Source of the DNA: Phallusia mammillata
Lineage: Eukaryota
Direction: 5' to 3'
NCBI GenBank assembly: GCA_965637545.1
Contig: OZ281495.1
Span: 3,224,001 to 3,288,000, forward strand
DNA: 64,000 bases
Below the pieces are notes generated by a model. That model did no database searches, had not been told where the DNA came from, and saw only the letters and a list, made by a program, of their open reading frames with translations. The position numbers and the translations under genes were made by a program. Numbering within the stretch: the first letter of the stretch is position 1; each line of letters begins with the position of its first letter. This document shows positions 4,045-50,829 of this stretch, piece by piece.

Positions 4045-5220
4045 CTGCAGAGAAACAAAAAAATAATGTTTTTTTTTAGTTTCATGAAAAAAACAGTCTA
4101 TTATACTTTGACATCGGTTCATGTAAATCAAAAGTGTTTTGAAAATAAATGTGTTTTTGAGTGTTACGGTAAGGAACAATTATTTTAGTAATTAATTTAT
4201 TTTAAAATCTAATCATTAAAAAACGATTGCGTGTTAAAATTTAAATCAAAACGTACGCTGTTAGTCTGTGTGACGTAATAACTAGGTTGTGACGACAAAT
4301 GCTAAGTAACGATGCAGTTGTATGTTTGTTTTTATTTTGAATTGGGGATTTTTTTTCTCCAACCTGATATCTGATTTCAAAGAAAATTGGATTTGCGTAC
4401 AAAATAAACTTGTCATTTTTTTTAATTTAAGCTGTTTAATTGGTTTTGGCATTGATTTTATCTTGGACCGCGGAAAATTACAAAACGTCTGTTGTGTAAA
4501 TGAAACTGTTTGAAAACCACTGGCCTACAGGTATTTGAAAAAGTCAGTAGGCCCGACATAAGTGTCAATATAATGTTGGTTGGCCTTCACAAAATTAAAC
4601 GTTCCCTATCCCTAAGCTAAACAAATAAAGTGTACAAAAAACTTAACAGATTTTGAACTTTACCTTTTGGTGGTCAGATTAAGTTCGCATTGTTTCATCA
4701 CAATAATAATAATGTATCACACTTTGAGGGTGAATAAAACAAAAAACTTTATATTTTACAAGATATTAATATTTTATCTGCTAATAACGCTGTGGGCCAC
4801 GGAACATTGTGGACCGCGGGCAGCGTGTTAGAGACCTGTTGTCGAGGAGCGCGCAGAACAATTTGCATGTGAACCTGAAGCGCCAGACTGCTTCGTACCA
4901 AGCTGTGAGATAGAGGAGTCCTAGTAGGGCAACGACCTTTCTCTTGTTTCGGTGTTGATTTGCCGTGTCTGAATACAGTTAGCTGATACAAATTGGTTTG
5001 ATGCCTTAATTTCCGTCGTTGCTATACAGGTTTCCCGGAGTGCAGTTTTGGCAAATATCTTTACGGATTTTTATTGCCCGATACTTTGTCGCGTTTTCAT
5101 GGTAGAAAGTGTGAGTTGGACAACGGTCACGGCCTTTTTCGAATGAGAAGAGGTAAATTTGAAAGAAAACGCATCTGACTCATTATAGAGCAAAATGTCA
5201 TATTATTTGGGACATCGTAT

Positions 5221-30340: not shown

Positions 30341-32603
30341 CTAAGCACATGATTTATACTGATATTTATATATTTAAATTTATTTATATGTACTCTCTGC
30401 AAAAGTTAGTTGAACATTACTAAATACTAAATTATATTGAGATCAGCTCATGACAATCCAGCGTATTTAACCAACAACTTCTAATACTGGATCAACTTGC
30501 TTTGTACATTCTGTGCTTTTTGTCAAAGCAGCATGATTCTAACTTTTAATAGTTCATCTCATTTAACTATTGACTTTTCATACGACGCAAGCTTCCAGTC
30601 TAATCAACAAACACAAAAATATTTTACTAATTACTCAAAAAGTAAAAACAACTACATTGCTTCCACTTTGCCACTCGATGTATCGCACTCGATTAGCTGA
30701 AAAATCAGGTGCTGGTTCAATTTCCCTGACCTCAGAAACCCGCATGACACCAAAATACATCTTTTGTTACCGCAAGCCCCAGTTGCATGACGATGATCGG
30801 CAGCAAAACAATGACAAAGTTGTTGTATGCTCGTTCGGACATTGCATTATGACATTTCTTTGGAAATTCGACCAACTATACCTCAACCTCACTGCGCCGT
30901 TCTGTTGTTAAGCAAAAATATTTAAAACCAAATTCTGTGGAAAATTGTCTGGCGCGCCTGTGCTCTTTACGCCATTTATCAATATTGCGGTGAACCCTTT
31001 GTGTGCGAGTTTCGAAAGTTTCAGTGTTTTTGTGTATGTTCAGCTATTGTATTACTTGCGATTTTTTTCAAAAAAAAAAAATTTAATAGACTTTACTTGC
31101 ACTTAACTGCACCCAAAGATAACGTTTTAGGTTTGTTTAAACCGGTAGTGGATTTTGAAAAACAACTGTTTAAAAAAATGACTTTTTACGTTGCAACGGA
31201 TGTCTACCTATTGTTTCAAAAGTTCTGTTGTTGTATGGCCTTATTTGGTTGTTGGTGAAATTTAGAAGGCTTATGGTAACAGAATGTGGAGGTTACTATT
31301 GTGCACTTGAGTGCCATTTAAACGATAAATAGTAATAAAAAACACTCTTGCTGAAAATAATGCAAAACTTCAATATGGGTAATTTTTATGACTTCAATTA
31401 TGTAAAGTACAAACGATTTCAACGGAGTCTGAATATTCATATTTCAAATTGACAAATAGAAAAAAGGGGAAACAAAATCTGCATGACAACACACATTTTT
31501 ACAATATAGCTACAATAGCTACAATACAATATGTATAAATAGTCAAAAAACGAATAAAAAAACACTTTTGCTGAAAAAAAAATGCAAAACTACAATATAG
31601 CTACAATACAATATGTGCTGAAGTGTGACATGACGACAAGCAAAAATAAAACATTTTACTGATAAACAAGATCTTTAGCGTATAACACTGAAAATCGTTG
31701 AACGTCGCCAATGAACGTCGATAACGTGACATGAATGTGACCTCAGAGTCGTTTTGTTACCCTGGACAGCGTTTACAACACACTTTTCATATGACTGCCA
31801 TGCTGCTTTGAAACGTGTTGCTAATTTGTTGATACTCGGATGGGTAAAATGTTTGTTCGAGCACAAACTCTCAAGTTCAATTTTAGAGGCCCGTGTTTCC
31901 CTGACCAAGAAACTTGAGAGACATCGCTTCAACGCAGTGGCTAATCATTCGCCGGACTTGAAAAAAGATACAGGCTGCCCGACGGCGGACTAGTTTTAGC
32001 ACAACGCATTCAGGCGTTGCCAGCCCACCGAGGATTGAAATGAAACAAACAAACCAACAAGCAATCTGTGGCTCGTTGTCTATTTCTGCATTTTTAAAAC
32101 ACGGGTGCCTCACACACTTGCGTCAACCAACTCTCTGATCATATACACTTTATCAGTTTGCCATTTATAACTTTAACTGTTTGTTTAAAATGCTTTGTTG
32201 AGTGCAGCGTGCGTTAGGGGAATATGAGTAGCAACAATAGTTCGTAGTTGGTTGAAAGAAGCCGCAATTGCAAACGTATTTCGAAATTCCGCCATTATGG
32301 AATATCGTTTCGTGGAGACCATTTCTTCTAAAAAATCACCGAACCGTTTCTCGCATCAATGTTTGTTACTTGAATCGGTCCAGTTGGAGCTAGAGATAGA
32401 AATTAAAGTTCATCACATGGGCATAAACTTATCAAAAACTTATGAATGCATCGGTAATTTTGTGTTGCAAACTAGAGGGGATACCCAAGACAGAACTCAA
32501 GTTAGACATCAACTTAGCAAGTTTAAAACGAAACAAAATTATGTTTTAATGAAGGCTAGAAAAATACTGATGTGCTGGTCGATGTGACTGAGATGCTTTA
32601 AAG

Positions 32604-33102: not shown

Positions 33103-36100
33103 TTAAGTGACGATTCTCTAAGAAAAGAGACTTGACGATATCTCGTAGATTTGGATTCTTAAACCTGATCTCCAGTTTTATCTCCTTAAATCCGTGTTTC
33201 CAGTTTTCGCCGTCCGTCCTTCTCAGGCGAAACTGCCAGGAATCTCTGATGCCCTCCAGTATAGCAATATGTTCATCAGGGTTTGCTACCGCGTTTCCAG
33301 CACTAACTTGGATTTGAACATCTTGTCTTTGGTTTCTGCATTTAGAAAATTACAAAGAAAATGATCTATGTTGTTGGATAAGTTTAGTTAAAGTTTCGAT
33401 TCAAACCAAATTCTTTCATATAAATGAGGGAGTGACCACTAGACGACGGTATCCATGCAGTATAATGCAAGAGATGTTGATTTGTGCTTCATAATAACAT
33501 CTTGGGTTGCTGTGGTCGGTGATTGTAGGCTAATTTTAAATACTTCATCTTCAAATATTTTACCATTAACAACGAAAAGACCCTCACCAGACTACGTATT
33601 ACAGGCTAATGCTAAATACGTTTTAACAAAACACAGTTTTTGATTTAAGTACTAACCCCAACAGAATAATCTTGTCAAAAACCAGGTTAAGCGACGTCAC
33701 ATCTTTTGCTGACTCAATGTTGTCGCAAATAAACACATGTGCGATGATTTCGGATACGATGTCTTCTTCGCAAGGAGAAACTGCCAGGATGATTGCCGTC
33801 TCTTTCATCAGACCAAAAAACTTTCCGACAACGTCATAGCTATATACAAATTGTTTCAATTGGTAATGTAAACCTTTTCGTATTATACTGAACAGTGTGT
33901 AATGCCATACATGCTAAAGTGGTCGGTTTTGAAGGTGAATGATCGGGTGGTTTGGTCCATCAAGCATTGTGTCAGAACTTCCCAGTCGGAATCGTTTGTT
34001 TTGTGGCGAATCTTGGCCAAATAGGAAGACAACTTGAATAAGTTGTTTATGAGTTCAATTATGATTATTATAACAGTTTGTGAAAATAGTTAAAAATGCC
34101 TTGCCAGGACAAACAAAACTCAATCACTCAATAACAAGTTAACTTACTTTTACGGCAACAGGAGATGCTTCGACATTCCGGTAGCAGGTAGGGAGTATGA
34201 TTTCTATAGGTTTCCGAAACTTGAAACCTTCTGGCTCACATTTCAACATCGGAGTGAGTCGGTCAACGATGGGATTGTCAACGCCGAATAACGAAGTCTT
34301 AAAAAATACAATTATTTTTCTTTGAGGACTTAAAAACCATAGATGCAACATAGAGCTGTGGTTTTTAAACTTGTTAAGCTTGTGGCCATAGAAATTAAAC
34401 ATTTATTCCCTACCCAGGGCTTGCTTAAAAGTGTTTTGAAATTAATTTGTTACTCTAATACGATGGACGAGACTTTCTTTGGTGTCATGCACATACACAT
34501 TTTGTTGTAAGTCTTAAAACATGAAATGGGACATGAACTCGGATATTTCTCGGCTTTATATTGGGTAGAGCTACTAACACCATACCTCAATGCAGCTTCA
34601 CATTGAGCTAAATTTGGATAGGTGACACAAAGAGCCGAATTATTAATTTACAAGCTAAAGAGGGGTAGAGTTGAGTAGTAAGTTTTTGACGCATTTACGT
34701 TACAAAATATAGTTTATACACATACTTTTATATAGTTCATACAAATTATATACTTATAATTTTTTTTAAGTTAGACTGATGCGACTGATTGTTATTTAAA
34801 AGTTGTAGTTTTAAGACCTTTCGGTTTGTGGATCCATACTTGGAAGTGATTACAATTTGCACCTCATCATCACAAGCACCTTGGGGAATTTTAACTTGAC
34901 AGCCACCCGCTCTTAGCGTTCCTCCTTCCAAACCCACGCGTTGCGAATCGGTGTGATAGATATAGTTCTGTTTGAACAAGATAAAATAGGTTAAAAACTT
35001 ATTTCAACGCTTTCAACCGCCAAAGCATAGAGGTACACGAAAATGCTGCAGTTGTGAATAGGTAACGTTGCAGTAGAGAGCTACAGTGTATGTGCATGTT
35101 TTTACATGGTACAAACCAATATAATAAAAAAGCCACTTTACATTTTGTATAACTTTCATAGCAGTTGTTCTAATTGTTATTACCCCTGCTAATAGAACAA
35201 CAAATTGAGTTTTATTCACCATTTTATCATAAAACTAAATAGCCAATGATCACGTCACATAAGGATAAAGTAAAAGAAAGATCTATTTCTATGTAAATAA
35301 CTAACCCCTGCAATGACCCCTCTTCGGGGGTAATTATCCACAAGTTAACCAACCTCAGGTTTGCGTGTAAATACCGACCTGTTGAGATGTTACTTTTGAC
35401 CCAGTTGAGCGAAAGAAAACTGAAACTATTTCTTCCAAATGTGTAGAAACTTTTACACTGGTTGCAGGTGGTGGTGTATGAGACTTTACATCCTGGTCTT
35501 GGATACTTGATACGTCATTGCCTTCCTTTTTCTGAATCTGTTGTTCACCGTTAAAATTACTAGCAATTTTGAAGAACAGCAGTGCTTTGCGATATTCCCG
35601 TTGATCCATGTGCGTTTTGGCGATTTCCCTTACATCAGCTGCAGTAAATTTGCGTTGACCTTGAAAAAGTAAAATTATCGTGTCGATCTTGTATCCAGAG
35701 TTGCACAGCCATATATAAATCATTGCACTTTAACTAAAATACATTTAAATGACTTCCAACTACATCGTTGCAATAAACACTTCAGGGGAAACGTTTTGTT
35801 TGTTTACGTTTTTTTGTACCCAGTGTAGGGGCAACTTTGAATGCTAACAATGTGTATGCTGTCTTAGGTTTCTTGCTCTATGGAACGCAATGCGGTTAAG
35901 ACAAAATTATACCCTATAACCGTGTAAATACAAGGCGGTTAAAGACAATCCACAAAATGTTAGATTATTTTTTTTTGTAAACTCACGTTTGAGTAACTTT
36001 GTGAATTTCTGTCTTATCAATGACGCTTCTTTATAGTTTTTTTCTTTTAAACTGTTATGGTATTTCTGAATCAGCTGGTCTTCAAGTAAACGTTTGTTTT

Positions 36101-36436
36101 CATCTGAAAGTAAGTGAGTATGCAAATAGTTGTTTTCTTTGCGTTCACTAATAATATGTTCTGGTTGTCGTTATTAGTATCTTTGTTTCTAAAAAAAGTA
36201 GTTATTAGTTAAAGTTATTGTGAACAGTTAGCATTGTGGAAATGCAACAGCATTGCTATGTTAACAGAATTTGGTCAAAAAAAAAGGTTCTAAATTGTAC
36301 CTCACATCGAACTTAAACTTACTTTTAAGAAATTCAAATAGTTCCTGATCAACTGCTTTTGCTTCGTCATATTTCCTTGTTAGAAAATTAATAAAATTTT
36401 GAATCGTCTCATTCAGGCTTATATTATTATATTCAC
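33103..36436 (-). CDS. Module A: second copy of helical/TPR-like + ZU5(HFS) + UPA-like module
   Basis: Exons 36323-36436, 35987-36103, 35379-35659, 34818-34967, 34148-34297, 33911-34011 (..FKTDHFS), 33657-33839, 33103-33335. Four exon lengths (281,150,150,101) are identical to module B, and intron positions are conserved. Confidence 0.8.
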
Positions 36437-37953
36437 CTGAAGATACAAAAATTGATAAAAACAGCCGTGAAACACTTAAACTGTATTGTTGTATGTGTTT
36501 ATCAGTTGTACAATGGTTTATTAGTGCACGTAGATATTTAGCATAAAGGGCTTGTTTCGAATGCAATACGGATGAAGTTAGAAAGGTGGCTTTCTAATAT
36601 ACTTTCATTTTATATATTCTATATCATATTCACCAATTTAATATACACATCATTTGATTTACAAATATGATTGTTTTTGCAAACAAAAACGAATGGGTCC
36701 CCACACGCGTGTTTGTGCGGATTTACGGAAAGAAAATCTTGCGGTTATTTTTAAAATTCTTAAGGACAAATTATTAGAAAGCACTAACCCAAAGTATTTA
36801 TTTTGCATGTCCGTATTCTTTTTGCATCATTATTGTCACATAAATTTATTGTTCTTCAGTAGCCTATTGCGGTGTAGTTGCCGAACGACCGTTTAAAAAT
36901 CTTTTGACATGGTTTTAAATAGCACACAGTCCTTAGTAATTAACAATAATGTTTCTCTCAATATATATTTGACTTACGTATTGTTTCTGGAGTATATGTG
37001 TAAAAATTAAAGAAGCTACGTTGTGACAAAAAAATCATTCTCAACTGTGTTCTGCGTTTCCTACAAGTTGACCTTCAGTCGTCATAAGACGGCCAACTTG
37101 TCAATTACCGTTTAATAACTTTTTATTGGATCTTTAGAAAACATGTAGGTTTTTACCTTCATGTTAATCAACAACGTTTGCCTGAAATGTACAAAACCGA
37201 AATATCGTTTTAATCACTTCTAAGATACAAAACTTTGGCCTAAGCTGAAAATACGCGTGCTAACGTAATAAAACCACATAGCATTACTGCGCTGATGTCT
37301 ACTAATCAAAAAGACTGCCTCTTAAAACGTCCGTCCACGCGTTCAGTTGCGATTTCCCGCTATGCATTAATTTGCCGCAATTGTAAACCAGTGAATTACT
37401 CCCTTGGGCTTTCCAGTGTACACATATTATGGGCTGTAACGACAACCATTAGGCCATTGGGCCGAAATTTTGATCACCAAATGAGTAACCCACTGCAAAC
37501 ATTTTTTTCCTAAAAATTTAACTTTTAGCAAATATAAAACGGGCTTGCATTTCTGACCTAAGGGACTGGAAAAAGTGAAGCCAATTATTTCGGGGTTAAA
37601 GGGGTGCAAAATGGGTAAATCCAATAAAAAGTTAGAATATTTAGAATAGCTTACATTGCACCAACCAACAAAGCATGAAACTCCTAGATCATGTACTTAG
37701 GTCAGTACAGCTGTTTTAAAGAAATTACGTTTTGGGGACCTGTTGTTGAACCCTTGGATCATTTTGGGTCAAACTTTAAGAGGAATAAATATGGATAAAT
37801 AATTAACATCTGTGTAAATTTGAATAAATTTAAAGCACGCTTTCTTGACCAAACGCGTATAACAAACCAGCGTTGGACAGAAAAAAGAAAAAAATACGGA
37901 CAAAAACAATATGTGTCACGGAAACGGGACCCCTAACAAGCAAAAACTTTTAC

Positions 37954-40900
37954 TTATGCCCAAGTGACGTTTCTCCAAGAAAACAGACTTGACGATATCC
38001 CGTAGATTTGGATTGTTAAAACTGATCTCCAGTTTGATCTCCTTAATCCCTTGTTTCCAGTTTTCGCCGTCCGTCCTTGTCAGGCAAAACTGCCACGAAT
38101 CTCTGATGCTCTCCAGTGTAGCAATATGTTCATCAGGGTTTGCTACTGTGTTTTCAGCACTTACTCGGATGTGGACATCTTGTTTTTGGTTTCTGTATTG
38201 GGTTTTACTTACATAAGACCGGTGATTTTGCATGTACAAACTTACAAAAATATAAATAAACCAATACATAGCCGTCTATGGAAGTGCATGTTTGGGGAAT
38301 TACAAACCATAGTATGCGTGATTTATTTTACCTGTTTTTTTTTATTTTATGAAATTTTGCTTGGCATTTTTTGCGTAATATTTATTTGGTAACGTCAGTC
38401 CACTATAAATGCTACCGCAATGATGCAAAGCCATATTTGTCAGAACTTGTTATTCAGAATTATTTAGGCTGCTGGAAAACATGTTTCAACAAAACACCAC
38501 AGTTTTTAACCTTAGAACTAACCGCAGTAGCACGATCATATCCAAAGCTGAATTAAGGGGCTTCTCATTTTTCGTTGACTCAATGTTGTCACAAACAAAC
38601 ACATGAGTCACAATTTCGGATACGATGTCTTCCTCATAAGAAGAAACTTCCAAGGTGATTGCCGTCTCTTTCATTAAATCGACAAAATCGCCAGCAGTGC
38701 AGATTCCGTCAAAGCTTTGAACAATAATTTTGGAATTTGAAATAATTACTAGAATGCATAAACATAACAGTATGAGAACATACATGCTAAAGTGGTCAGT
38801 TTGGAAGGTGAATGATTGAGTTGTTTGGTCCATTAGGCATTGCGTCAGAACCTCCCAGGTAGAACTGTTGGTTTTGTCACAAATCTGCGCAATACATGGT
38901 TGATAGCTATAGAACGATAGGTTAACAGGAAACGCACACCGTTTTGAAACTTTTGGAGGCAGACCTGTATGTCATGGGTTATACGTTGGTTTAAGAAATA
39001 CCTTTTAAGCTAATTTAAAGTATTTACCGAATCACAGGTGAGTATAAACAGCAGCGTATGATATTTTTACTGGTAAACAGCACTTAATTGTTTTAGTTAT
39101 TACTCGTCTGTTTGAATTAAAAAATAAATATTTAAATCGGTGGAGCTGTAAAAGTAAGAACTAAAATCACAAAATTCCGTATACATTAGATATTAAGTTC
39201 GCACGTTAATAGCTCCACCAATAACCTAAGCAGCAGAGACATAATTTGGTAGAAATATACAAAGGCAAAGCTGTGCTTGTCCTTGACTGTCGTTTTCAGC
39301 ACTTACTGCGACAGAAACAGGAAATTCTTTGACATTCCGGTAACATGTAGGGAGTGTGATTTCTTTTGGTTTCCTAAACTTGAAACCTTCTGGTTCACAT
39401 TTCAAAATCGAAGTGAGTCGGGCAACAAAACCATTCTCAATGTCTAACGGCGAAACCTTAAATAATAAAATTATTAAACATTAAAGTTTAGTGATTAGAG
39501 ATAGTACGTATATACCACTGTGTTTTTCCTATTTTGATCATGGGGTTCACCGAGAAACTAGATGTTTTGCCACCCTTGATCCCCAGTTGTTCTTTTTGTG
39601 TTACGACACACAGTTTAAGAATTACGGACACATTGACTATGAATAAGCCAGTAATGGGGACCCATGAAAAAATAATAAAAAAAATCTAAACATAACATGA
39701 CAAAAAATAGTAAATGTGAGGTTCGCGAGAGCTTTTTGAACAAACTGAACCTTCCTTTTAATTTTCTTATTGAAAATCGCGTTTTTTCACACATGTACAA
39801 ACTTTTATCACGCTAACATGTAACATTATCTGCAATAACCTCTTTGCCTCGCTGTAGTAACGTATTGTACTCTACTCTTCATTACCTTTCCCACGGTTAT
39901 ACAACATATGTTTAGCCATCCAATTCAAATCTAGCCCTGTACTTTTTCTTGGCCAAATAAAAAACAAATCAAAAAACTAAACATAAACCAATTGTGTCTG
40001 TTGTTTTTTAACATAAATTCTAGTTTTAGGTGAAGACCTTTCCGTTTGAGGATCCATATTGTGAAGTGATTACAATTTCCACCTCATCATCACAAGCACC
40101 TTCAGGGATTTTAACTTGACAGCAACCCGCTCTTAGCGTTCCACCTTTCGCACCCACGCGTTGTGAATCGATGTGAACGAAATATCTCTGCATGCGAAAG
40201 GATAACAAAAGTTGAAAACAGTAATATTACTCAAATTTCGGCACTCTTCAACCAAACTGCATCACAGCATAAAAGTGCACCATAAAAAAATATTGAGTAA
40301 ACGTTGCCGAAAAGAGGTACAGTGTGTGTTTATGTATGGTACCCCTATTCAAATACATTTTGCAGTGGTTCCTAACCGGGTATGAATTCGTCTCAAGGGA
40401 GCATATTCTTAAACTTCAGGGAGGCATTTATTTTATCTACATGTGGTTTGTAAATAGACATTACAGCTCTGGGAATATAACCTGTGAAGTTAATAAAAGG
40501 CCTAATTTTATCTTGGTATGGTGTAACATCTGCTATGCAGTCTATTGGGTAGGAATGAAATTATTTTTTGTGAAGTGAAGAATTTTTCAAAATAGGTTGG
40601 AAATCATTGTTTTAAAAGCAAAACAAGGGCGATGGATAGGCACAAACCTGTTGAGATGTTACTTTTGACCGAGTTGAGCGAGAGGAACACGAAACTTTTT
40701 CTTCCAAATGTGTAGAAACCTTTACACTGGCTGCAGGTGGTGGTGTATGAGACTTTACATTGTGATCTTGGACACTCGATGCCTGATTGCCTTCCTCTTT
40801 CTGAATCTGATGTTCCCCGTAAAAATTTCTTGCGATTGCAAAGAACAACAGTGCTTTGCAATATTCTTGGTCTTTCACGTGCTTTTTGGCGATTGCTCTC

Positions 40901-42915
40901 ATATCCTCTGCAGTGTAATTGCGTTGACCTTAAAAAACAAAATTACTGCGTCGATATTGTGTCTTAAGCTTCTTATTTTATTGCAAGCCTGTTGAATCAG
41001 TTATATTTGATTCATTTCTCTCTACTCAACAGGTTCCACAATGTTGTAGAGCAATACTGCTTCAGTTTCTCGCCAGAGTTGTAAACGAGCCTGAAATTGG
41101 ATCCCGTACCCGAAAGTACAAGCCCCAAACCCGGCCTGTACCCGAATCGTTTGTGAGAAGACAGTTAAGGCCTGAAAGGTCCGATTTACAACTCTGACTT
41201 AAGCACAAGACCGCGCCCACCACTCGGTCTATTTTTATTAAGTTTGTGTGTTCTAATCCTATTTCGATCGCTTGTGTTTCCCTGAGCAAATATTTTGAGT
41301 GACATTGCTCCAACCCAGTGGTACCCGATGAGTAGAACTAATAAGCTCACCAAATCACTGCAAGCCGTAAAAGTCGAATAAAAAAATAATTAATCTGACT
41401 TGCAATATAACAGGAAGCTCGATGGTAGACTAATTGTGAGTATAACGCATATAGGCGTTCTCCCCACTCTAGAGATGGACCGAGCCGAGCCAGACCCCTG
41501 TACACGGTACCGAGCATCGCTGTTTTGATGCTCAGTGCTCACAATTTGATCTGAGCATTATATTTTCATGTTAATGCCCAGCTAATATACGAAACTGGTG
41601 TTCGAAAGAGTATAAAAGTACAAAAATGACCGTTTTTAAAGCGTTAGATAGTAAAATAACGCGTACATTTTGAGGCCTGTACAGCTTATAATACACCGCG
41701 GATAACGCAAGTGACATGTTAAAAATACGAAACTATCGTTTTATTTTAGAACAAATGTTGGCCGGCTAGAACAAATGTAAAACGTAATTAGCCTCCAGAT
41801 AAAGTTTGCAGACTGACTAATCGTTTTTTAACAAACTCACTTTTGAGCAGCTTCGTAAGTTCCAGTATTGTCGATTTTGCTTCGTCATGTTCAAGGAATT
41901 TTTGAATCAACTTCTCTTCACGTGGACATTTGTTCTCATCTTAAAACAAAATGTTTTTTGAGGCTAACTATTCACTCCAGAATTATTTAAATTGCACAAA
42001 AATTAACAGTGTAAAAACGAGTATCATTAATAAACAATATCATTTTGCCCACAGACAAAATCAGTAACTCATTACCAGGCTGACAACCATGACAGAGGCA
42101 ACCTTACATCCACAGAACTGTAATGATAATAAAATACAACTATTCTGTTGTGTTACACAATTGTTTGCACGGTGGTAAAACTTATGTTTCATTTCAAAAG
42201 CGTAGCGTACGACTTCGCGTGACGTCGTCAATGTTTCAATTGATTCGGCCGAATTTATTTGGCAAAACTGTCGAATATTCGGTTCCTGTTAGAACCCTAT
42301 TTAGCCGATTTGGTGCATTCTAGTTTTACAAATCCCACTTGGATCTAAACAGCAAATATCTTAATTACACTTTGTGATGTTTTTTACCAGTTGCAGCTTG
42401 TTAGTGCACCGGAGTTGAAAAGTGTGATTCGGGTTCGGGCTAAGTTTTTATACTCGGGCTTGATTCGGACCTGACTTCACACTTAGCATCATTTTTGCTG
42501 AATTTTCACCGACTTTCGGGCTTGATTTAATTTAATAGATTTAATATTCAAGGTCAGGTTCGGATCGGATCGGGTTTCAGGCCCTAATTGCAGGTCCACA
42601 ACTCCTAGTGAGACACCGAACCGACTTTTAGATCATTTGAATGTTGATCGACTTTCTCGGATGCATGTTTCGGAATTGCGTATCATTTTGGCCAAAATAG
42701 TTTTTTTCACAAACTATCCTGTTATTCTAGAACAAATGTTGGCCGGCTAGAACAAATGTGTAATTAGCCTCCAGATAAAGTTTGCAGACTGACTAATCGT
42801 TTTTTAAGAAACTCACTTTTGAGCAGCTTCGTAAGTTCCAGTATTGTCGATTTTGCTTCGTGATGTTCAAGAAATTTCTGAATCAACTGCTCTTCCCGTG
42901 AAGGTTTGTTCTCAT
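37954..42915 (-). CDS. Module B: helical/TPR-like exons + ZU5 domain (ending in HFS) + UPA-like domain
   Basis: Exons 42817-42915, 41841-41939, 40648-40928, 40038-40187 (GAKGGTLRAGCCQVKIPEGA), 39307-39456 (LKCEPEGFKFRKPKEITLP), 38784-38884 (..FQTDHFS), 38523-38714, 37954-38192. All are phase-compatible and stop-free. Confidence 0.8.
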
Positions 42916-42920
42916 CTTAA
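41743..42920. repeat. Recent duplication of a 99-nt exon and its downstream intron (41743-41945 vs 42722-42920)
   Basis: Near-identical ~200-nt blocks (DENK..EE.LIQKFLEH.EAKSTILELTKLLK). Confidence 0.92.
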
Positions 42921-43322
42921 AGTAATTGTGTTTGAAAAACTAACTAGTGTATGAGCAAGTCAGACTAAAGAAAATATTACGCTTGTTTACGTTTTATTTA
43001 ATGATGTGTCGGCTTTGTTTACCACATCGCACAAAACTTTAGGCGACGTGCAGTGTCAGTCATGCGTAACCAAAATAAGCAGGATAACAAAAGAAACGGG
43101 AGGAAAAGAGGAGCTGGACTACCATGTTAGTATACTATAGTAACATCACTGTTTGCCTGGCGGTAAATCTTATGTTTCATGTCAAAAACGTAGAGTACGA
43201 CTTCGCGTGACGTCGCAAATGTTTTGATAAATTCGGCCGAATTTAGTTGGCAAAACAGTCGAATATGCTGTTTTCGCTTTGAACCCTAGCCTATTCGATA
43301 CAGTATGTCATCTTATAATACT

Positions 43323-46300
43323 TTAATAATCTTCTAACTTAGATCTTAATTGTTCTTCACGAAAGCTGTACCATGGGCACACAGAAACACGAAATAGCTT
43401 TTGTGTTATTTCATGTACAAGAGAGTAGCCTGTAAAGTGACCGCTAGTCAAATAATTTTTCTTTGGGGCGGATTGGTTTGCGACGCCTAATTTAAGTTTT
43501 TTTTTGTCAGCAGCCAGGAACAAGGAAAAAAAATATATGTCACCTTGAGGTGGATTTGGAGATATATAACCGGAAACTGCTCTCTGTGACGTGGGTGGAA
43601 GCTCCTTGGTGGCTTTATTTGACGCCAAATCTGAAAAGCCAGTGTTCGTTAAGATCAGCGGTTCTCTAGTTATACGCCGGTGCTTTTTAGGTGGTTTGCA
43701 AGTAGCTTTCAGCTAAACTTCGGATCAAGATTTGCAACCCAACTGATCACCCCTGTTTTGGGGCGAACTTTGTGTGCATTTATTTCTGGAAAATATCATT
43801 TAAGTTTCGCGTTGTTTTTAGCATATTGGTTGGATCAAAAAATACAAAAACTTTCAACAGAATTATAGCAATATATGAGTAAACTCAAACGCTTTTGTAG
43901 AAATCTTATTGATGCAATACTTTGGAAATCCGTTGTAACCATTTGATATAATTTCAAAATACACAAATCGCCCGACAAGCAAAATCATCCGGTATACAGC
44001 CCTGTTAGAAAGGCATGTATGATGTCCTTTGTCTCAGCGCTTGTGTCGATAACAAGTGAATACAAATAACTTTATTCTAGCTGTGTTTCAAGTACTCATA
44101 AATTGATTTAAATTTGAGATAATATACAGTAAATGGCTTCGCATTATTAATAACTACCCATTGCGATCCACTGTTAATTTCCTGATCTTGGATTTGGCCT
44201 GCCGCATTTAAAAAGTGGACAAATAAAAGCAGGGCGTAAATCGTAGCTTTGGCTTGTGTTTAAAATCTCTTGATCATCAAAAAGTTTTGCAGTTTTACAA
44301 AGTTGATTTTGAACTCTCATTCAAACAAAATCGATAGTTCGCGTAGCGTCGCTTTTTCTATAATAAATCATAATACGCTATTAAAATGAAGCCGATCTTC
44401 AAAGCATGTCATATAAAAATCTAGCCAACATCTAGATTTGAACGCACCACAGGACTTTATCTAAAAACAACTGGATAACTTTTATATTTCCGTATTACGG
44501 ACCCGGTGTTGACTCTTTTTGGAGTCTCTTCGTCGGCTGTGTTGAGGTTATACTGGTTTTGCCTCGAACTGCGACGTTATCAGTGGCACTTTTGCTTTCC
44601 GAAGTCAAACCCCGTTCGTCTCTTAAACGTTGGAAACCAGGAGCCTTTAGGTCTTGGGTCAATCCCAGTGGTGACGTATGTGTAAAGGTTTTGGTGCTTT
44701 TACGCGTTTCTGTTAAATCTATAAATGTTAAATCAAATGTCAAACAACTATGTGTAAAGAAACAACAAACACACAATGTATATTTCAGAATCGCGATGTT
44801 AATTGTGCAAAACATCTTTGCAAAATAGCAAAACAGAATACACAGTGGTTTTGTTCCAGACTTGTAAGTTACACCTTTCAACCTTACAACGAGATGGTTT
44901 GTACAGAAAACCGATCCCAGGTCGGTTACAAGGAACAACACGGTTGGAAATTTACAACAATGCCAGTCAAAACTCACAAATTGAATAAGGTGAAACCAAC
45001 GTTAAGTTGGGATACAATGAGAAATTTTAGATACGCAGCTTGCTCGTAGACCTAGTTTACCTCAACATTTGCACCCATTTAAAACACTAAATCGTTAACA
45101 GAAAGAAAGCAATGCGTGAGCTCTTACGTTTGGGTAGAAATCGATACAAAAACATTTGATCATAATTCATAATATTTCAAAAAGTATTTTTTGTAGACGT
45201 GCATTACTCCAATGGGTCGGAAACGTACGTCCGCCAACCAACTTATCCGGCCCGCGGTCCTCTTATATAAACAAGTCGGGTTATAAAAACTCACTTTTTG
45301 GGAGGAATAAAGCCATATTTTCATTTGTATTTAGAGTTCTTCCTGTATAACACGTTCAAAAATCCTGGATAAATGTAGGTTATATTTCCGTATCACTGAC
45401 CTGGTGTTGACTCTTTCAAAGGTGTTTTCGTCATCTGTGTTGAGGTTACGTTGGTTTTGCCCTGGACAGTGACGTCATAAATGGCGCCTTTACTTTTCGA
45501 AGTCAAACCCCGATCGTCTCTTAAACGTTGAAAATCTGAAGCCTTTAGGTCTTTGGCCATCCCCAGTTGTGACGTATGTGTAAGGTTTTTGGTGCTTTCA
45601 CGTGTTTTAGTTAAATCTATAAATGTCACACCAGCAATTAAACAGATGTGTATAAAACAGAAAAAACGCGATGGTGACTGTGAAAAACACTTTTACAATG
45701 TAGCAAACAAGAATGACGCAGCGCTTTTGTTTCAGACTTGTAAGTTAAACCTTTCAACCTTACGAAGGGAACGGCGTGAACAGAAAACCGATCCCTGGGT
45801 TACAAAGGACAGCATGGCCGGGAATTTACAACAATGAAAGTCAAAACTCACAAAGCCGCAAATTAAATAAGGTGAAGCAGACGTTCAGTTGGGATATCAA
45901 AAAAAATATTTGATAGCGATATCAGATTGCTGCTTGTATTTGATTGGCACGTGTTGCATTATCTCGCAATGTTTACTTGTTAATGCTGGTGATCCCGAAA
46001 ATGTTACTGCTTGTATATTTTGGATTGTTTTAGGAAAACCTGGGGTTTGTATTATGATCATGCTTTAACTCAGGAAGTTTTAAACCACATGCGGCCTGTG
46101 AACACTTTTTTGGACAAACCACTTTACCTGACGTTAAATCGATCGCATCTATTTTCTCATCTTTCGCACTGCTCTGATTTTTAGTCGAATCGAATAATTT
46201 TTTTTCCTTGGCAATTGTTTTTGTTCCTGGAAAAAAAGGGGTTGTCAGTATTAAGTTTCTGCTGACAGTCACCGTTAAAAAAAACTTAATTATGTCACCT

Positions 46301-49300
46301 TTATGTGGGATTGGAGTTTAAATGCAGTTTTCAATGTTTCTGTGGCTTGTAGATTGCTCAAAGGCGTTTTTTGCCTCAACATTTGCACCCATTTATTTTG
46401 TTATTTTATCGTTGTATTGTTGAAATTGCACATTATTTCAACATATAAAGTCTCATTCTGGCTACACTAGACAATACGGCTGATCTCTTGTCACCAGCTG
46501 CACTGACGAGACCTTACAGGTCGAAACAGTGGTGTGCAATGTCTGCAGTCTACATGTCATTTATTGGCTTGACAGTTCAATGTTATTCTCAACATTTAGG
46601 AATAAACAAACAACTGTAACTGCACATTACCTGACGGTGCCGTGGGGTCGGAATTGTCAGAACCACTCCATTGTGTCGTATAACGAAGTTTTATCGGGAC
46701 CTTGCGTGCAGTAAAATCTAAAAAACATCATTTGTTTTATAATTTTCTAATGCACTATGGCGAAAAGATCCCTCAAACTAATTTAATGATCTAACACTAT
46801 AACGTTGCAATTAGTTTGAGTCGAGTTGACACTTTTAAGATGAGGCATTTACGTTTGATTTGCATCTTAAGCGAGGTAATACCTGATGCCCAAGGAGGCA
46901 AGTCTTGCCTTTTTTCTGTGGGTTTAGTTGGACGTTTCAACGTTTCGCCTGTCTGTGGTTTCGGGTTAAGTTTTGCACCACCTAATTAGCAAATTGTTTG
47001 TCGTTACTAAGAAGGCTTAACTAGCAAAGAACAGTTATATAATAGCAAATGTCATTAATGTGTACATACACAATGGTTTTAACAAAAACAGACACTTATT
47101 TTACTTGAACCTTCATGTGCATCGAAGCGTGTCGTTTTAGTATCTCGTTTATTAGGGACAGTTTTAAGTTAACGGTCTATTAAAGGTCCCTGTACACGAA
47201 CTTAATGCTCAATTAACAAAACACACAAATTTATCGATAATGCAGGTTTTTTGCTTTTTAAACAATGTACGAATTGCCACATAAGTACCTGGGTTCCCCT
47301 CTCTTGACAGGTCGATTGCTGCTTTGGTTGATTGTTTCAGCCTCTCATTGAAAGTTTCGTTCACGTCTGAAAATTTACCGTATTTGAATTGAGTTTAAGT
47401 TTATCTCGCTTGGTGAAAGAACACATAGCTTTATAATTTAATGAAGAAATCACCAAAATTTACGAAACTGACATTAAACAACTAACAGGTACTTCTGACC
47501 TATTCCTAGCTATGTACTGGCCTATTCCTAACAGGTACTAGCCTATTCCAACTAGCAGGTGCTTCTGGCCTAGTCCCAGCTAAGTGACAAAGCTGGAAGT
47601 TCGGTTTGATTCGATGTAACGCCTTCAAAGCTTCAGTGTGCCTGGTGTCCTACGATATATATATGAGTGTGCCGTGAGCGCTGGTCTGCATGAAGGGTTG
47701 GTCCAATTATGCTTAACTCAGCATTAATTACATTGTTCAAATTTATTATAAGTTATGATGGCTGATCAGTGCGGGCGGAAACTACACATAAAGGTCTCGA
47801 TTCATTTACCTGGTTTTGACTCCACTGAGGGCGGAACAACCTTTGCCGATCGTTGAAAAGTTTCTTTGCTTTTGTGTTGGATTTCAGTTGCCTTTGTTTT
47901 AACGGGAAGCTTATCGTGTACATGAAGTGGAGGTTTTTCAGTGCTTTTAAGCGTTTTGGTTGAATCTGAAAATTGACACATAGTTTTTGCAATGTAACAG
48001 CATTCAATGAAGAATTAAGCTGTTCGGGTTTCAAGGCTGTCAACCTCATAAAATAATTGCGTGTACAGCAAACCGACCCGTTATCAGGTTACAAGGATCA
48101 ACAGGGTCGTGAATTTCAACAAAAGTGAAAAGTCAAAAGGTGAAACTAAAGTCGAGCTGATAAACAAAACTAACATTTACACCAGCTAGAAATTAGTTTC
48201 CGATATTGGATAGCAATTTCAACGAGCAACTGTTTATATATAGAGCAACCATTTTGCGTTTATTTCACTTTTAAGTAAAGTCATTACTTCGTTTTCATTG
48301 GGTTTTTGAGAGCATGGCTTACCTGATGTAAATGGTGTTGCCCCTTTTCTTTCTTTTACCGCTTCTGTCTGATGTTTAGCAATTTCAAACATCTGTGGAT
48401 TCTGGGCGAAGTTTGTTTTTCCTTAACAATATATTGTTGTTATTTCACTAATAAAATGCAACATCAAAAATCTAAAATCACGTTACCTTGAACTGGAAAG
48501 GAACTATTCTCATGGGAAATACCTTCCTGTGACGTATGCGGAAGCTCTTCTATGGTTGATCTAGCTGTCAAATCTGAAAGTTTATATTTCAACTGTGTAA
48601 GTCTTTCATTGTTACGTTTATTAATTAGTTCTAAAACTGTTAAAGCTATTGTTAACAGATGGTGATTGGTAAGAAAAATTTATCACCAATTCAGATTCAA
48701 GGTTATAACTGCTGTATATGTAAGTTTCTTTGTAAGCCATTACCAACAACAAGCAATCAACAATAACGTAAGCACCGTCGTGTGGAGTGGTAATGAGAGT
48801 AAAACGCCTCTTGTCTTGTTTATGCGGAAAATCTTCGATGCTTTGATCTGCCGTTGGATCTACGAAATTTCATTGTAAGTTTGCTTCAAATCAAAGCTGT
48901 TTGTACATTTAAGACTGAATGGTGGCGACAAAAACGTTTTTCTTTACCAACTTCCTTGTTGTAACACAAACAACGAACACAAATGCAAATATGAATTCAT
49001 CTACTTTACCCGAATCTCGCGGTAATGTCTTGGCGTCTGTTGTTAGAGTAGACCAGTTTTCTTCGGTTCTTGCTGGTTTGGTGGTTTGTTTGAGAATTTG
49101 AAGGGTCGATGGGTCTAAATGCAAAACGGTTGTTTTAAGTCGGTTTTCTTGAAAAAGTATTTTCGGATTAACGTCATATAAAACCGATTGATTCTGTTTA
49201 AACCAATGAAATGTATGTCCATTGGTTTCACTGTTTTATAGTTAAAAAAGACAATAATCGTCAGCCTTGCTGTTGATGGTTTTGAATCATTATTGAAACT

Positions 49301-50829
49301 GTCGTTTCAAATTTACCGATAAATGCTCTGGCTCTAGATGAAAACTGGTGAAGTTGAACGCACTCGTCCTCATTGAACGTTGACTGTTCATCTAGGTCCA
49401 TTTCCTTTAGAGCTTTTGTGGCTTGTGAAAGTAGATGAGCGGATTTTTGCTTGGCAAGCAATTGATTTAGAATGCGTGTTACTTCATTCATGTTGGGACG
49501 TTTAGTAGGTTTTTGATCCCAGCATCGTTTCATCAGTTTTTCCAATTCTGAGACCATTTTCTTCTCTTCGCTCTTCAAAGTTTCCATCAGTTTGCGTATT
49601 TTGCCACAGTCTGGTCTTTTTCCTTTTATAATAGCATTTATTAAATCTGTTAAATTTACACTTGGATAGGCAGAATTACGCGTGAGGACTTCGTATATCA
49701 AAATAGCAAATGAATACACGTCGAATTCTTTCCTGGGCTTCATTGTTTTATCCTGCAGTTTTTCGGGAGCTGTGTACTGGGGCGTGTATTGTGCTTTCTC
49801 CTTCGTGCTTCTTGCTGAAGAATCTGCAGGTGCTTGGCCAGTCAAAGTTGCCAGCTCTGCCCCGCCGAAGTCGCCAATTTTGCAGTGGAGCTCTTCATTG
49901 AGAAAAACGTTTCCCGGTTTCAAGTCCAAATGCAGCAAACGTTTGTCAGGTAGATTGTGGCAGAACTGAATTCCTTTTGATATTTCGGATAAAATTCGAA
50001 GACGCAGGCCAAATCCCAAAGGAATGTGTCGGTTGAAAAGGAGACTGTTAAGGTCTCCGCCTTTGTAGTATTCCATCACAATTCCCATTGTAAATGGCCA
50101 TTTAACATAGCCAAGGACCCGGACGATATTTTGATGGTTTGCTTTCTCCAAATGCTGCATTTCTTCATGTATTCTGTTAAAATCAGAGGTATATTTTCTA
50201 GTAAAGTTCTTACTCACTCTTCTGTAGTAAATAGGACAGCATACCTTTTCACCAAAGGTTTTCGATCCTTGTCACTGGCTACAGTGAACACTTTGATAGC
50301 AACGATCTCTTGCTTCAGTTTATGGTAGCCATATACAACGTCTCCGAAACCACCCGACCCAGCGACGAACTTCTCGGGATCGCATATGATGTCCTTCGGC
50401 TTAAACTCAGGTAGCTGTGGTCAAAATTGTTTAATCACAAACCGTAACTAACAGCAAAGATGACATTTTGTGCGTTACTTGCCACATGGGCCAAACTATA
50501 GTAAATTAAAACCACGGCAGAAACACTATCCTGACACGATAGATTTCCAAAGATGGGGCGAAATATCAGTTTACATGTAGAATGCAACTACTATCTTATG
50601 TTTTACAGCTATAACTGCATTTTGATCTCATATTACCAAATGCAGTCTCTCGAATAACAATAATGTTGCAAAATCACCTTAACTCCAAACAATTGTCAAG
50701 CGCGAGAAACTTTTAATTAACGCACTTAACATAAGGCTAGTGTGAATGTGATAATCACACTTTGTTAGTTTTCTTCTGCATTTAGTCAAAAAACAGATAG
50801 TAGTAACTTACGTCAGTTGTGCTTGTCAT
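43323..50829 (-). CDS. Gene 2 5' part: RIPK-like kinase + 12 low-complexity cassette exons, with a possible terminal exon 43323-43429 (~850 aa short form)
   Basis: Exons: 50812-50829 (MTSTTD|gtaagt), 50245-50414, 49317-50173, 49010-49114, 48776-48859, 48487-48573, 48323-48421, 47810-47965, 47289-47366, 46883-46981, 46631-46717, 46128-46226, 45401-45616, 44503-44718, 43544-43630, 43323-43429. The 12 linker exons are all phase 1-1 with lengths divisible by 3. Confidence 0.75.
44430..45900. repeat. Tandem duplication (~900-bp unit) carrying the two 216-nt linker exons; third diverged copy around 47810-48150
   Basis: Exons 44503-44718 and 45401-45616 are paralogous, and intron blocks 44860-45020 vs 45730-45900 match. 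A related ACAG.AAACCGA.CC..GGTTACAAGGA block lies at ~48065. Confidence 0.9.
49317..50414 (-). CDS. Kinase domain exons of gene 2 (RIPK/TKL family)
   Basis: GSGGFGDVVYG, VAIK, HLDLKPGN, DFG, YTAPE, DVYSFAIL, IIKGKRP, LMKRCWDQ.P..RP. A 71-nt intron (50174-50244) sits at the same position and phase as in gene 1. Confidence 0.93.

What the first reader, a model, noticed from the sequence alone, without database searches (positions are those of the whole stretch)
33911..38884. Both ZU5 domains keep the HFS autoproteolysis motif
Seen: F(Q/K)TDHFS-I at the end of each ZU5 (38784-38800 and 33911-33927), directly before a conserved phase-2 intron. Established: PIDD1 and Nup98 self-cleave at the F/S bond of HFS by an intein-like N-O acyl shift. 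Inference: the long protein would be processed at two sites, releasing or priming an N-terminal kinase fragment, which would act as a self-cleaving kinase switch.
Basis: partly seen in the sequence, partly recalled or inferred. Interest (0 to 1): 0.72.

Follow-up and report, generated by a model that had tools for sequence, protein, structure and literature searches.

The report
Self-cleavage motif kept in both ZU5 domains
A sea-squirt gene for an immune-type RIP-like kinase carries two copies of a ZU5-UPA module, and both keep the His-Phe-Ser self-cleavage motif of PIDD1 and UNC5CL; the motif looks functional, but cleavage, expression and the one-protein reading are untested.

Summary
On the minus strand two paralogous exons (38884-38784 and 34011-33911) end in T-D-H-F-S plus AT|GTATG. 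This is a phase-2 intron one codon after the Ser, and the split codon gives Ile.

These exons close two ZU5 domains, each followed directly by a UPA-like domain. They line up, without gaps at the junctions, with two cDNA-derived Phallusia mammillata proteins.

The genome, almost certainly P. mammillata, holds at least 25 distinct modules of this kind.
- In 26 distinct sequences H is kept in 25, F in 25 and S in 24 (plus one Thr).
- The codons vary synonymously, including AGC/AGT versus TCA for Ser.
- The residue just before H varies freely.

This pattern points to selection on the nucleophile, so self-cleavage is likely but unproven.

The gene reads as RIPK-like kinase, phase-1 mini-exons, two [helical exon + ZU5|UPA] cassettes, and a newly found 20-residue terminal exon. 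There is no death-fold domain. A collinear paralog has a single module, so this gene arose by internal cassette duplication. One-module and two-module isoforms are all in frame.

No RNA supports any isoform. "Release" of the kinase is not supported by precedent, because ZU5 and UPA halves normally stay associated after cleavage.

The scan had already noted the same gene on its inverted copy about 67 kb beyond this window (s1-368985).

The parts
50245..50414 (-). RIPK-like kinase, first kinase-domain exon (Gly loop GSGGFG, VAIK lysine); a 47-nt intron follows
   Evidence: Pfam Pkinase 1.7e-38 on the adjoining exon
49317..50197 (-). RIPK-like kinase, main exon (HLDLKPGN, DFG, APE all present); ends with a phase-1 donor G|gtaaat
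   Evidence: (best solved relatives RIPK4 2e-28, then RIPK2/1/3)
42817..42915 (-). helical mini-exon, 99 nt, phase 1-1
41841..41939 (-). helical mini-exon, 99 nt, phase 1-1 (88% identical copy of the previous one)
40648..40928 (-). module A exon 1: helical stretch plus Ser/Thr/Pro-rich stretch; phase-1 acceptor, phase-0 donor
40038..40187 (-). module A, ZU5 exon 1
39307..39456 (-). module A, ZU5 exon 2 (the LKCEPEGFKFRKP..LPTCY core)
   Evidence: Pfam ZU5 E=0.016; ZO-1 ZU5 E=0.0021
38784..38884 (-). module A, ZU5 exon 3, ending T-D-H-F-S + AT|gt (predicted scissile bond F|S)
38523..38714 (-). module A, UPA exon 1 (begins (I)FDGIC...)
37954..38192 (-). module A, UPA exon 2; phase-1 donor A|gtaaaag (if unspliced, a stop follows 12 codons later)
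36323..36436 (-). linker mini-exon, phase 1-1; no start codon; homologous to part of the paralog's long exon at 4075-3287
35987..36103 (-). linker mini-exon, phase 1-1
35379..35659 (-). module B exon 1 (helical + S/T/P-rich)
34818..34967 (-). module B, ZU5 exon 1
34148..34297 (-). module B, ZU5 exon 2
33911..34011 (-). module B, ZU5 exon 3, ending T-D-H-F-S + AT|gt (predicted scissile bond F|S)
33657..33839 (-). module B, UPA exon 1 (begins (I)YDVVG...)
33103..33335 (-). module B, UPA exon 2; canonical family donor TTAA|gtaagt, phase 1
32328..32389 (-). terminal coding exon, phase-1 acceptor; encodes a 20-residue tail containing VTNIDA, then a TAG stop
   Evidence: ORF and stop are kept in the single-module paralog; the tail resembles that of the P0002 cDNA protein

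Best explanation
The two HFS tripeptides are the conserved self-cleavage sites of two paralogous ZU5-UPA modules. They belong to one internally duplicated member of a large family specific to Phallusia mammillata.

The gene reads, on the minus strand: RIPK-like kinase with all catalytic motifs, phase-1 helical mini-exons, [helical exon + ZU5|UPA] A, two mini-exons, [helical exon + ZU5|UPA] B, and a 20-residue tail. There is no death domain or CARD.

By homology with PIDD1, UNC5CL and the NLRP1/CARD8 FIIND, each folded ZU5-UPA would cut its own chain between Phe and Ser. The Ser hydroxyl attacks the preceding peptide bond (an N-O acyl shift), and the Phe is buried as an anchor.

Shown here:
- the motif, its place at the ZU5/UPA boundary, and the conserved phase-2 intron;
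- selection on H, F and S across the family;
- an intact kinase upstream;
- one uninterrupted reading frame from module A to a conserved stop.

Inferred:
- that cleavage occurs;
- that both modules sit in one protein with the kinase (my odds are about even; A-only and B-only isoforms are equally in frame);
- that the cut halves stay together, so that the cut arms the protein for later removal or unfolding of one part, rather than freeing the kinase by itself.
For: - **Motif and splice sites:**
- **Colinear with cDNA-derived proteins:** P0001 keeps EHFS|EF, and P0002 has RFG at that spot.
- **ZU5 membership:** Pfam ZU5 scores 35.5 and 34.3 bits against a cut-off of 21 in P0001 and P0002, which are 53-55% identical to modules A and B. 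A profile that includes the window exons hits the ZO-1 ZU5 domain at 9.8e-07.
- **ZU5-UPA fold:** the Atlas model of P0001 residues 52-335 matches the UNC5CL cluster at TM 0.77 over 273 residues, UNC5 at 0.75, and SH3BP4/MACC1.
- **Motif conservation:** in 26 distinct exon sequences H is kept in 25, F in 25 and S in 24 (plus 1 T). The residue before H is the most variable column. Codons are CAC/CAT, TTT/TTC and AGC/AGT/TCA.
- **Selection on both copies:** A versus B gives dN/dS 0.43 (ZU5 0.43, UPA 0.33) at dS 0.36. Exons are 74-89% identical, while introns are at most 68% identical or cannot be aligned.
- **Kinase:** Pkinase 1.7e-38; closest solved relatives are RIPK4/2/1/3; catalytic motifs are intact.
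- **Reading frame:** module A through the terminal exon is one 833-codon frame with a single stop.
- **UPA donor is real:** the phase-1 donor at the end of UPA is conserved in paralogs and is used in the P0001 cDNA.
- **Origin by duplication:** the single-module paralog is collinear, and its downstream block aligns after module B.
- **Recurrent architecture:** roughly half of about 30 distinct ZU5 modules have a same-strand RIPK-like kinase exon 4.8-20 kb upstream.
- **Precedent for HF|S and SF|S cleavage:** PMC3210808 and PMC10084454.
Against: - There is no biochemical evidence of cleavage.
- There is no transcript evidence. Contigs from four RNA-type runs covered only the repeat between the modules, plus trace depth in three bins that overlap exons.
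- Pfam UPA, FIIND and Peptidase_S68 (the PIDD site model) do not match, even at E <= 10.
- My AlphaFold model of the homolog is poor (pLDDT 56, and under 50 around the motif). The PIDD-equivalent position is therefore shown at the level of the domain boundary, not residue by residue.
- Family members can lose the motif: P0002 has RFG and one paralog has HYS.
- dN/dS of 0.43 is only moderate constraint.
- The locus is present in several near-identical copies, not all of which need be expressed.
Confidence: 0.6

Rival explanations
1. The two modules are alternative cassettes. Because every cassette junction is phase 1, the kinase exons may splice to module A and then straight to the terminal exon, or skip A and use B. 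Each protein would then carry one ZU5-UPA and be cut once, not twice.
For: - The phase-1 donors and acceptors are all interchangeable, and the A-only product is in frame and ends at the same stop.
- The closest paralog and most other family members have a single module.
- Module A's UPA donor has drifted from the family consensus TTAA|GTRAGT to A|GTAAAAG.
Against: - The A-then-B order with its linker exons is kept in all four copies, including the inverted copy at 96-98% identity. That copy is too recent to be a strong test.
- Both modules are under purifying selection, which fits either reading.
- No RNA data decide between them.
Confidence: 0.3
2. HFS is kept for folding only and the modules do not cleave. 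This would resemble UNC5A-D and the ankyrins, whose ZU5 domains have the same fold without self-processing.
For: - The buried Phe is a structural anchor in uncleaved ZU5 domains too (PMC3210808).
- There is no match to the PIDD site model Peptidase_S68.
- P0002 shows that the fold tolerates RFG.
Against: - The nucleophile Ser (or Thr) is kept in 25 of 26 sequences and His in 25 of 26.
- Ser uses both AGY and TCA codons, while the neighbouring position varies freely.
- Non-cleaving ZU5 domains do not keep H and S at this spot: UNC5B has Leu at the position of the Phe.
Confidence: 0.2
3. This copy is an unexpressed or decaying duplicate in a fast-turnover gene cluster, and the motif is merely inherited.
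For: - There is almost no exon coverage in four RNA-type runs.
- Three near-identical direct copies plus an inverted one exist.
- A repeat has inserted between the modules.
- dN/dS is 0.43.
Against: - All 19 exons listed have open frames and GT/AG sites, and the kinase motifs are intact.
- Exons are conserved well above introns between A and B.
- The runs examined are small contig sets of unknown tissue, so absence there is weak evidence.
Confidence: 0.12

Closest known systems
PIDD1 (p53-induced death-domain protein 1)
   Same: It has two HF|S self-cleavage sites, each at the C-terminal end of a ZU5 domain, and processing yields three fragments. It signals together with a RIP kinase (RIPK1).
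   Different: PIDD1 is LRR-ZU5-ZU5-UPA-DD. Here the order is kinase-(ZU5-UPA)x2 with helical linkers, no LRR and no death domain. The kinase is fused rather than recruited. Pfam Peptidase_S68, the PIDD site model, does not match.
UNC5CL
   Same: It has a single ZU5-UPA that self-cleaves, and it is the best structural neighbour of the homolog P0001 (TM 0.77). It signals to a death-domain kinase pathway (IRAK), according to the title of the Heinz 2012 reference listed in PMC10084454.
   Different: UNC5CL has a transmembrane helix and a C-terminal death domain, and no kinase.
FIIND of NLRP1 and CARD8
   Same: It is a ZU5-UPA pair cut at (S)F|S. The halves stay associated, and activation follows removal of the N-terminal part.
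   Different: The motif is SFS rather than HFS. The effector (CARD) is C-terminal to UPA. Here nothing but a 20-residue tail follows the last UPA, and the enzymatic domain is N-terminal.
Amphioxus RIPK-like proteins with a ZU5 domain (for example the LRR-ZU5-kinase protein listed in PMC9573974)
   Same: A RIP-type kinase and a ZU5 domain occur in one invertebrate-chordate protein.
   Different: The order is LRR-ZU5-...-kinase with a single ZU5. That paper reports neither UPA nor an HFS motif.
Nup98 autoproteolytic domain
   Same: It uses an HF|S cut by an N-O acyl shift, with the Phe buried as an anchor.
   Different: It has a different domain context (nucleoporin) and is only distantly related in fold.

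Membership tests
ZU5 domain (Pfam PF00791) | Sequence match to the ZU5 profile above the curated cut-off | tested here: met
   The homologs P0001 and P0002 (53-55% identical to modules A and B) score 35.5 and 34.3 bits against a cut-off of 21. The window's ZU5 exon 2 alone gives E=0.016 and matches the ZO-1 ZU5 domain at 0.0021. A profile that includes the window exons matches ZO-1 ZU5 at 9.8e-07.
ZU5-UPA supramodule | A UPA beta-sandwich directly after ZU5 | tested here: inconclusive
   No Pfam UPA, UPA_2 or FIIND match, even at E <= 10. At fold level, the Atlas model of P0001 residues 52-335 matches UNC5CL at TM 0.77 and UNC5 at 0.75. My own model is poor; VIA-align gives only Z 4.6 to the rat NLRP1 FIIND UPA chain, among many generic sandwiches.
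Self-cleaving ZU5 (PIDD1 / UNC5CL type) | H-F-S at the C-terminal end of ZU5, immediately before the first UPA strand | tested here: met
   Both modules have it. It is kept in 24-25 of 26 distinct family sequences, with synonymous codon variation.
Self-cleaving ZU5 (PIDD1 / UNC5CL type) | Match to the curated PIDD processing-site model (Pfam Peptidase_S68) | tested here: not met
   No hit at E <= 10 for the exons or for P0001/P0002. The model is short and built on vertebrate PIDD.
Self-cleaving ZU5 (PIDD1 / UNC5CL type) | Cleavage at F|S that is abolished by S->A | not testable with these tools
   This needs expression of the module.
Self-cleaving ZU5 (PIDD1 / UNC5CL type) | Phe buried in the ZU5 core, with a strained loop at the scissile bond | tested here: inconclusive
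   The AlphaFold2 model has pLDDT below 50 over residues 122-199, which include the motif.
PIDD1 ortholog | LRR - ZU5 - ZU5 - UPA - death domain | tested here: not met
   No LRR or death domain was found in the exons scanned. The modules are ZU5-UPA twice, and the protein ends 20 residues after the last UPA.
FIIND (NLRP1/CARD8) | SF|S motif, and a CARD after UPA | tested here: not met
   The motif is HFS, no Pfam FIIND match was found, and no CARD follows; the terminal exon encodes 20 residues.
RIP kinase family | Kinase domain closest to RIPK1-4, with catalytic residues intact | tested here: met
   The best solved relatives are RIPK4 at 2e-28, then RIPK2, RIPK1 and RIPK3, and then TAK1. GxGxxG, VAIK, HxDLKxxN, DFG and APE are all present. 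RHIM, DD, CARD and ANK were not seen in the exons scanned.

The most novel reading that the evidence does not exclude
The P. mammillata cluster would be a chordate-invertebrate 'tripwire' family in which a RIP-type kinase is covalently fused to self-cleaving ZU5|UPA modules. That would make it a natural fusion of the partners that vertebrates keep apart (PIDD1 with RIPK1, UNC5CL with IRAK). The layout would be reversed relative to NLRP1/CARD8: the effector is N-terminal and no death-fold domain is present. This internally duplicated gene would give a three-piece protein whose assembly state controls the kinase.
Probability: 0.2. Interest if true: 0.75.

Novelty: new variant of a known kind. 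Interest (0 to 1): 0.5.

Why it matters
Self-cleaving ZU5-UPA modules are the core of the NLRP1 and CARD8 'functional degradation' sensors and of PIDD1. They are known mainly from vertebrate proteins that end in a death-fold domain.

This locus belongs to a large family in the sister group of vertebrates. The genome holds at least 25 ZU5-UPA modules and at least 134 RIPK-like kinase exons. In this family the cleavage motif is clearly under selection, the enzymatic partner (a RIP-like kinase) appears to be fused in the same gene, and there is no death-fold output.

If cleavage and the fusion are confirmed, this would be a natural experiment on how ZU5-UPA autoproteolysis can regulate a kinase. 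It would also give an evolutionary link between PIDD/UNC5CL-type modules and RIP/IRAK-type kinases. If not, it remains an ordinary, lineage-specific expansion of a known domain pair.

Tried and rejected
- **RNA support.** The only holders of the stretch were two runs of unknown type, probably genomic. Contigs from four runs guessed to be RNA covered only the interspersed repeat at about 36.55-37.93 kb, plus trace depth in three bins that overlap exons. No splice joints were seen.
- **Sequence search of solved structures.** The HFS exon plus UPA exon gave nothing at E <= 10. Only the ZO-1 ZU5 domain is reached, by ZU5 exon 2 and by the profile.
- **Pfam on the C-terminal halves.** No UPA, FIIND or Peptidase_S68 match.
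- **Exhaustive representative search** with the HFS exon plus UPA exon 1 gave three hits. Two are real (P0001, P0002); P0003 is a low-complexity false hit.
- **Word-based searches** with P0001 and with profile A3 returned only the queries themselves.
- **Structure.** AlphaFold2 on P0001:50-335 with the shallow alignment A1 gave pLDDT 56. Foldseek puts ankyrin ZU5(-UPA) entries on top, but with poor TM-scores. The wide VIA-align search gives Z <= 5.9, mostly generic sandwiches.
- **Deeper alignments.** Four attempts to deepen the alignment with paralog exon fragments (A2, A4, A5, A6) were misaligned by MAFFT, so I did not fold them. The spliced window protein itself could not be handed to the tools, because it has no single reference.
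- **Complex prediction.** The predicted complex of the two would-be cleavage halves of P0001 (residues 50-183 and 184-335) gave no verdict: score 0.00 and the partner's fold uncertain. This is evidence neither way.
- **Papers.** Tinel 2007, Heinz 2012 and Liao 2014 are not held in the library.
- **Death domain or CARD downstream of module B.** I considered and dropped this. The conserved terminal exon ends the frame after 20 residues.

Full report
**What is there.** The window has no N and about 36-38% G+C. The finding lies in a minus-strand, intron-rich gene.

Reading the minus strand and fixing exon ends by their AG/GT sites gives two paralogous 101-nt exons, 38884-38784 (module A) and 34011-33911 (module B). 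Both end ...F-T-F-(Q/K)-T-D-H-F-S, followed by AT|GTATG. The next exons start with C, so the split codon is ATC (Ile). The sequence across the junction is HFS-I-F-D-G in A and HFS-I-Y-D-V in B.

The introns are 69 nt in A (in frame, no stop) and 71 nt in B (contains a stop and shifts the frame).

**Are these ZU5 ends?** Each module has five domain exons: three for ZU5 (50 + 50 + 33 residues) and two for a 140-residue C-terminal domain.

An exhaustive HMMER search of 1.84 billion representatives, using the open frame that spans the HFS exon and the next exon, found only two true relatives. Both are cDNA-derived Phallusia mammillata proteins.
- P0001 (603 aa) keeps E-H-F-S|E-F.
- P0002 (521 aa, named 'NLRC3-like', LRR-ZU5-UPA) has K-R-F-G at that spot.

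The window exons align to them without gaps at every exon junction. This validates the splice model, including the intron after HFS.

Pfam ZU5 is significant in both proteins (35.5 and 34.3 bits against a cut-off of 21), and they are 53-55% identical to modules A and B. The window's ZU5 exon 2 alone matches the ZO-1 ZU5 domain (E=0.0021), and the profile including the window exons reaches 9.8e-07.

The C-terminal half has no Pfam match to UPA, FIIND or Peptidase_S68. At fold level, however, the ESM Atlas model of P0001 residues 52-335 superposes on the UNC5CL cluster (TM 0.77, 273 residues), on UNC5 (0.75) and on SH3BP4/MACC1, all of which are ZU5-UPA proteins.

My own AlphaFold2 model is poor (pLDDT 56, under 50 around the motif). 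It gives only weak matches to ankyrin/ZO-1 ZU5 and to the NLRP1 UPA chain.

So HFS sits at the boundary between ZU5 and UPA, where PIDD1 and UNC5CL have HF|S and CARD8/NLRP1 have SF|S (PMC3210808; PMC10084454).

**Is the motif under selection?** The whole genome (240 Mb) encodes P0001 at 100% identity over four exons on C5:21.908-21.913 Mb. It is therefore almost certainly P. mammillata.

It holds at least 164 exon matches to the module, mostly on contig C2 between 0.8 and 4.05 Mb. I collected the HFS exon from 25 distinct genomic modules and added P0002.
- H is kept in 25 of 26, F in 25 of 26 and S in 24 of 26, plus one Thr.
- Only one Phe (five residues before the motif's His) and one Trp are as conserved as these.
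- The residue just before H is the most variable column.
- Three very divergent members, which share little else in this exon, still end in N-H-F-S, Y-H-F-S and R-H-F-T.
- The phase-2 intron, one codon after the Ser, is in the same place throughout.
- The codons vary: CAC/CAT, TTT/TTC, and AGC/AGT/TCA for Ser.

This is constraint on the amino acids, not lack of time to diverge. The exceptions are one paralog with H-Y-S and P0002 with R-F-G.

Between A and B, exons are 74-89% identical while introns are at most 68% identical or cannot be aligned. dN/dS is 0.43 at dS 0.36. Both copies are maintained, under moderate constraint.

**The gene around it.** Upstream on the same strand lies a kinase domain (exons 50414-50245 and 50197-49317).
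- Pfam Pkinase scores 1.7e-38.
- The closest solved relatives are RIPK4, RIPK2, RIPK1 and RIPK3.
- The Gly loop, VAIK, HxDLKxxN, DFG and APE motifs are all present.

The kinase ends with a phase-1 donor. Two 99-nt helical mini-exons (42915-42817 and 41939-41841) are phase 1-1, and module exon 1 has a phase-1 acceptor.

UPA exon 2 ends with a phase-1 donor. That donor (TTAA|GTRAGT) is conserved across paralogs and is the one used in the P0001 cDNA.

After module A come two more phase 1-1 mini-exons without a start codon (36436-36323 and 36103-35987). The first of these is homologous to a stretch that is contiguous with the module-exon-1-like sequence in the neighbouring paralog's long exon. Module B follows.

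Comparison with the closest paralog (kinase 87% identical, C2:3.8427-3.8556 Mb) is informative. That paralog is collinear from upstream of the kinase through a single module, and its downstream block then aligns to window 32438-32122, after module B. In that block I found a terminal exon (32389-32328). It has a good acceptor in phase 1 and encodes a 20-residue tail and a stop. Both frame and stop are kept in the paralog, and the tail resembles that of P0002.

From module A exon 1 to this stop the frame is open for 833 codons. The gene therefore arose by tandem duplication of a [mini-exons + exon 1 + ZU5 + UPA] cassette inside a kinase-ZU5-UPA gene. It has no death-fold domain.

Because all cassette borders are phase 1, A+B, A-only and B-only products are all in frame. 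The sequence cannot tell which of them is made.

**Is kinase-plus-module a real architecture?** The genome has at least 134 RIPK-like kinase exons. Roughly half of about 30 distinct ZU5 modules have such an exon 4.8-20 kb upstream on the same strand with no other module between them. These span kinase identities of about 42-87% to the window kinase.

Kinase exons are dense on C2, so this is supportive but not conclusive. No protein joining kinase and module is in the searched libraries, and the RNA-type runs gave no usable coverage.

The locus itself occurs in three near-identical direct copies (C2 3.02, 3.13 and 3.26 Mb). There is also an inverted copy at 96-98% identity (C2:3355272-3375287). 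The scan had already noted that inverted copy and read it the same way (s1-368985).

**How it most likely works.** By homology, each folded ZU5-UPA would cut itself between Phe and Ser through an N-O acyl shift. With both modules in one chain, this gives three pieces:
- kinase-linker-ZU5(A);
- UPA(A)-linker-ZU5(B);
- UPA(B)-tail.

In the known systems the halves stay bound after the cut (PMC3210808). The cut would therefore prime the protein rather than release the kinase. Any switch would need later degradation, unfolding or displacement of a piece.

My attempt to score the association of the two halves of P0001 gave no verdict.

My odds:
- the motif is the homolog of the PIDD/UNC5CL site: about 0.85;
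- it cleaves: about 0.6;
- kinase and both modules are in one protein: about 0.5;
- cleavage by itself frees an active kinase: about 0.2.

**Comparison and novelty.** This is not a PIDD1 ortholog (no LRR, no ZU5-ZU5, no DD) and not a FIIND (HFS rather than SFS, no CARD).

It works like UNC5CL/PIDD1-type ZU5-UPA modules, but in a new context: an N-terminal RIP-like kinase, two modules, and no death-fold output.

A ZU5 next to a RIP-like kinase has been listed for amphioxus, in a different order (PMC9573974). I found no paper that mentions ZU5 together with ascidian terms among the top results.

I rate it a new variant of a known kind, of moderate interest, pending RNA and cleavage tests.

Noticed in passing
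G000:C2:3018056-3031794, 3127751-3146346 and window 33103-50414; inverted copy at G000:C2:3355272-3375287: The whole kinase-A-B gene is present in three near-identical direct copies about 115 and 128 kb apart. One copy differs by one residue in ZU5 exon 2. There is also an inverted copy at 96-98% identity, introns included. These could be recent segmental duplications or an assembly effect.
   Followed up: partly
whole genome G000, mostly C2 0.69-4.04 Mb, also C1, C3, C4, C6: At least 134 exons encode RIPK-like kinase domains, 35-100% identical to the window's, and most have open frames. This is a very large lineage-specific kinase expansion.
   Followed up: partly
window 36550-37930: The stretch between module A and the linker mini-exons is an interspersed repeat. 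It is very abundant in contigs of the RNA-type runs (summed depth up to about 1,900), while the flanking exons have almost none.
   Followed up: no
window 38715-38783 (-): The 69-nt intron right after the HFS codons of module A is in frame and has no stop. If retained, it would insert 23 mostly hydrophobic residues directly after the scissile Ser. The matching intron of module B has a stop.
   Followed up: no
P0002 (P. mammillata CAB3264355, 'NLRC3-like'): This is an LRR-ZU5-UPA protein, laid out like NLRP1 without a CARD, whose motif has changed to R-F-G. The closest genomic relative found (C5:20.85 Mb, L042) still has H-F-S.
   Followed up: partly
window 32328-32389 (-) and G000:C2:3842097-3842409: A short terminal exon encodes a tail with the conserved stretch VT(N/H)IDA, similar to VTNIEA in the P0002 tail. 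It may be a family-wide C-terminal motif of unknown role.
   Followed up: partly
window 3287-4075 and 16145-17970 (-): A second RIPK-like kinase gene lies in the window. Its long exon carries, contiguously, homologs of the mini-exon at 36436 and of module exon 1. No ZU5-UPA hit lies within the 87 kb downstream of it, so it has a different C-terminal architecture.
   Followed up: partly
window 50198-50244 (-): A 47-nt intron lies inside the kinase domain. The paralog at C2:3.854 Mb has about 370 nt more at the same place.
   Followed up: no
L027/L043 (G000:C5:21908302-21912932): The P0001 gene (ZU5-UPA plus a long Cys-rich tail with a weak P2RX7_C-like match) has no kinase exon on its contig among the hits listed. 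Stand-alone ZU5-UPA proteins with HFS therefore also exist.
   Followed up: no
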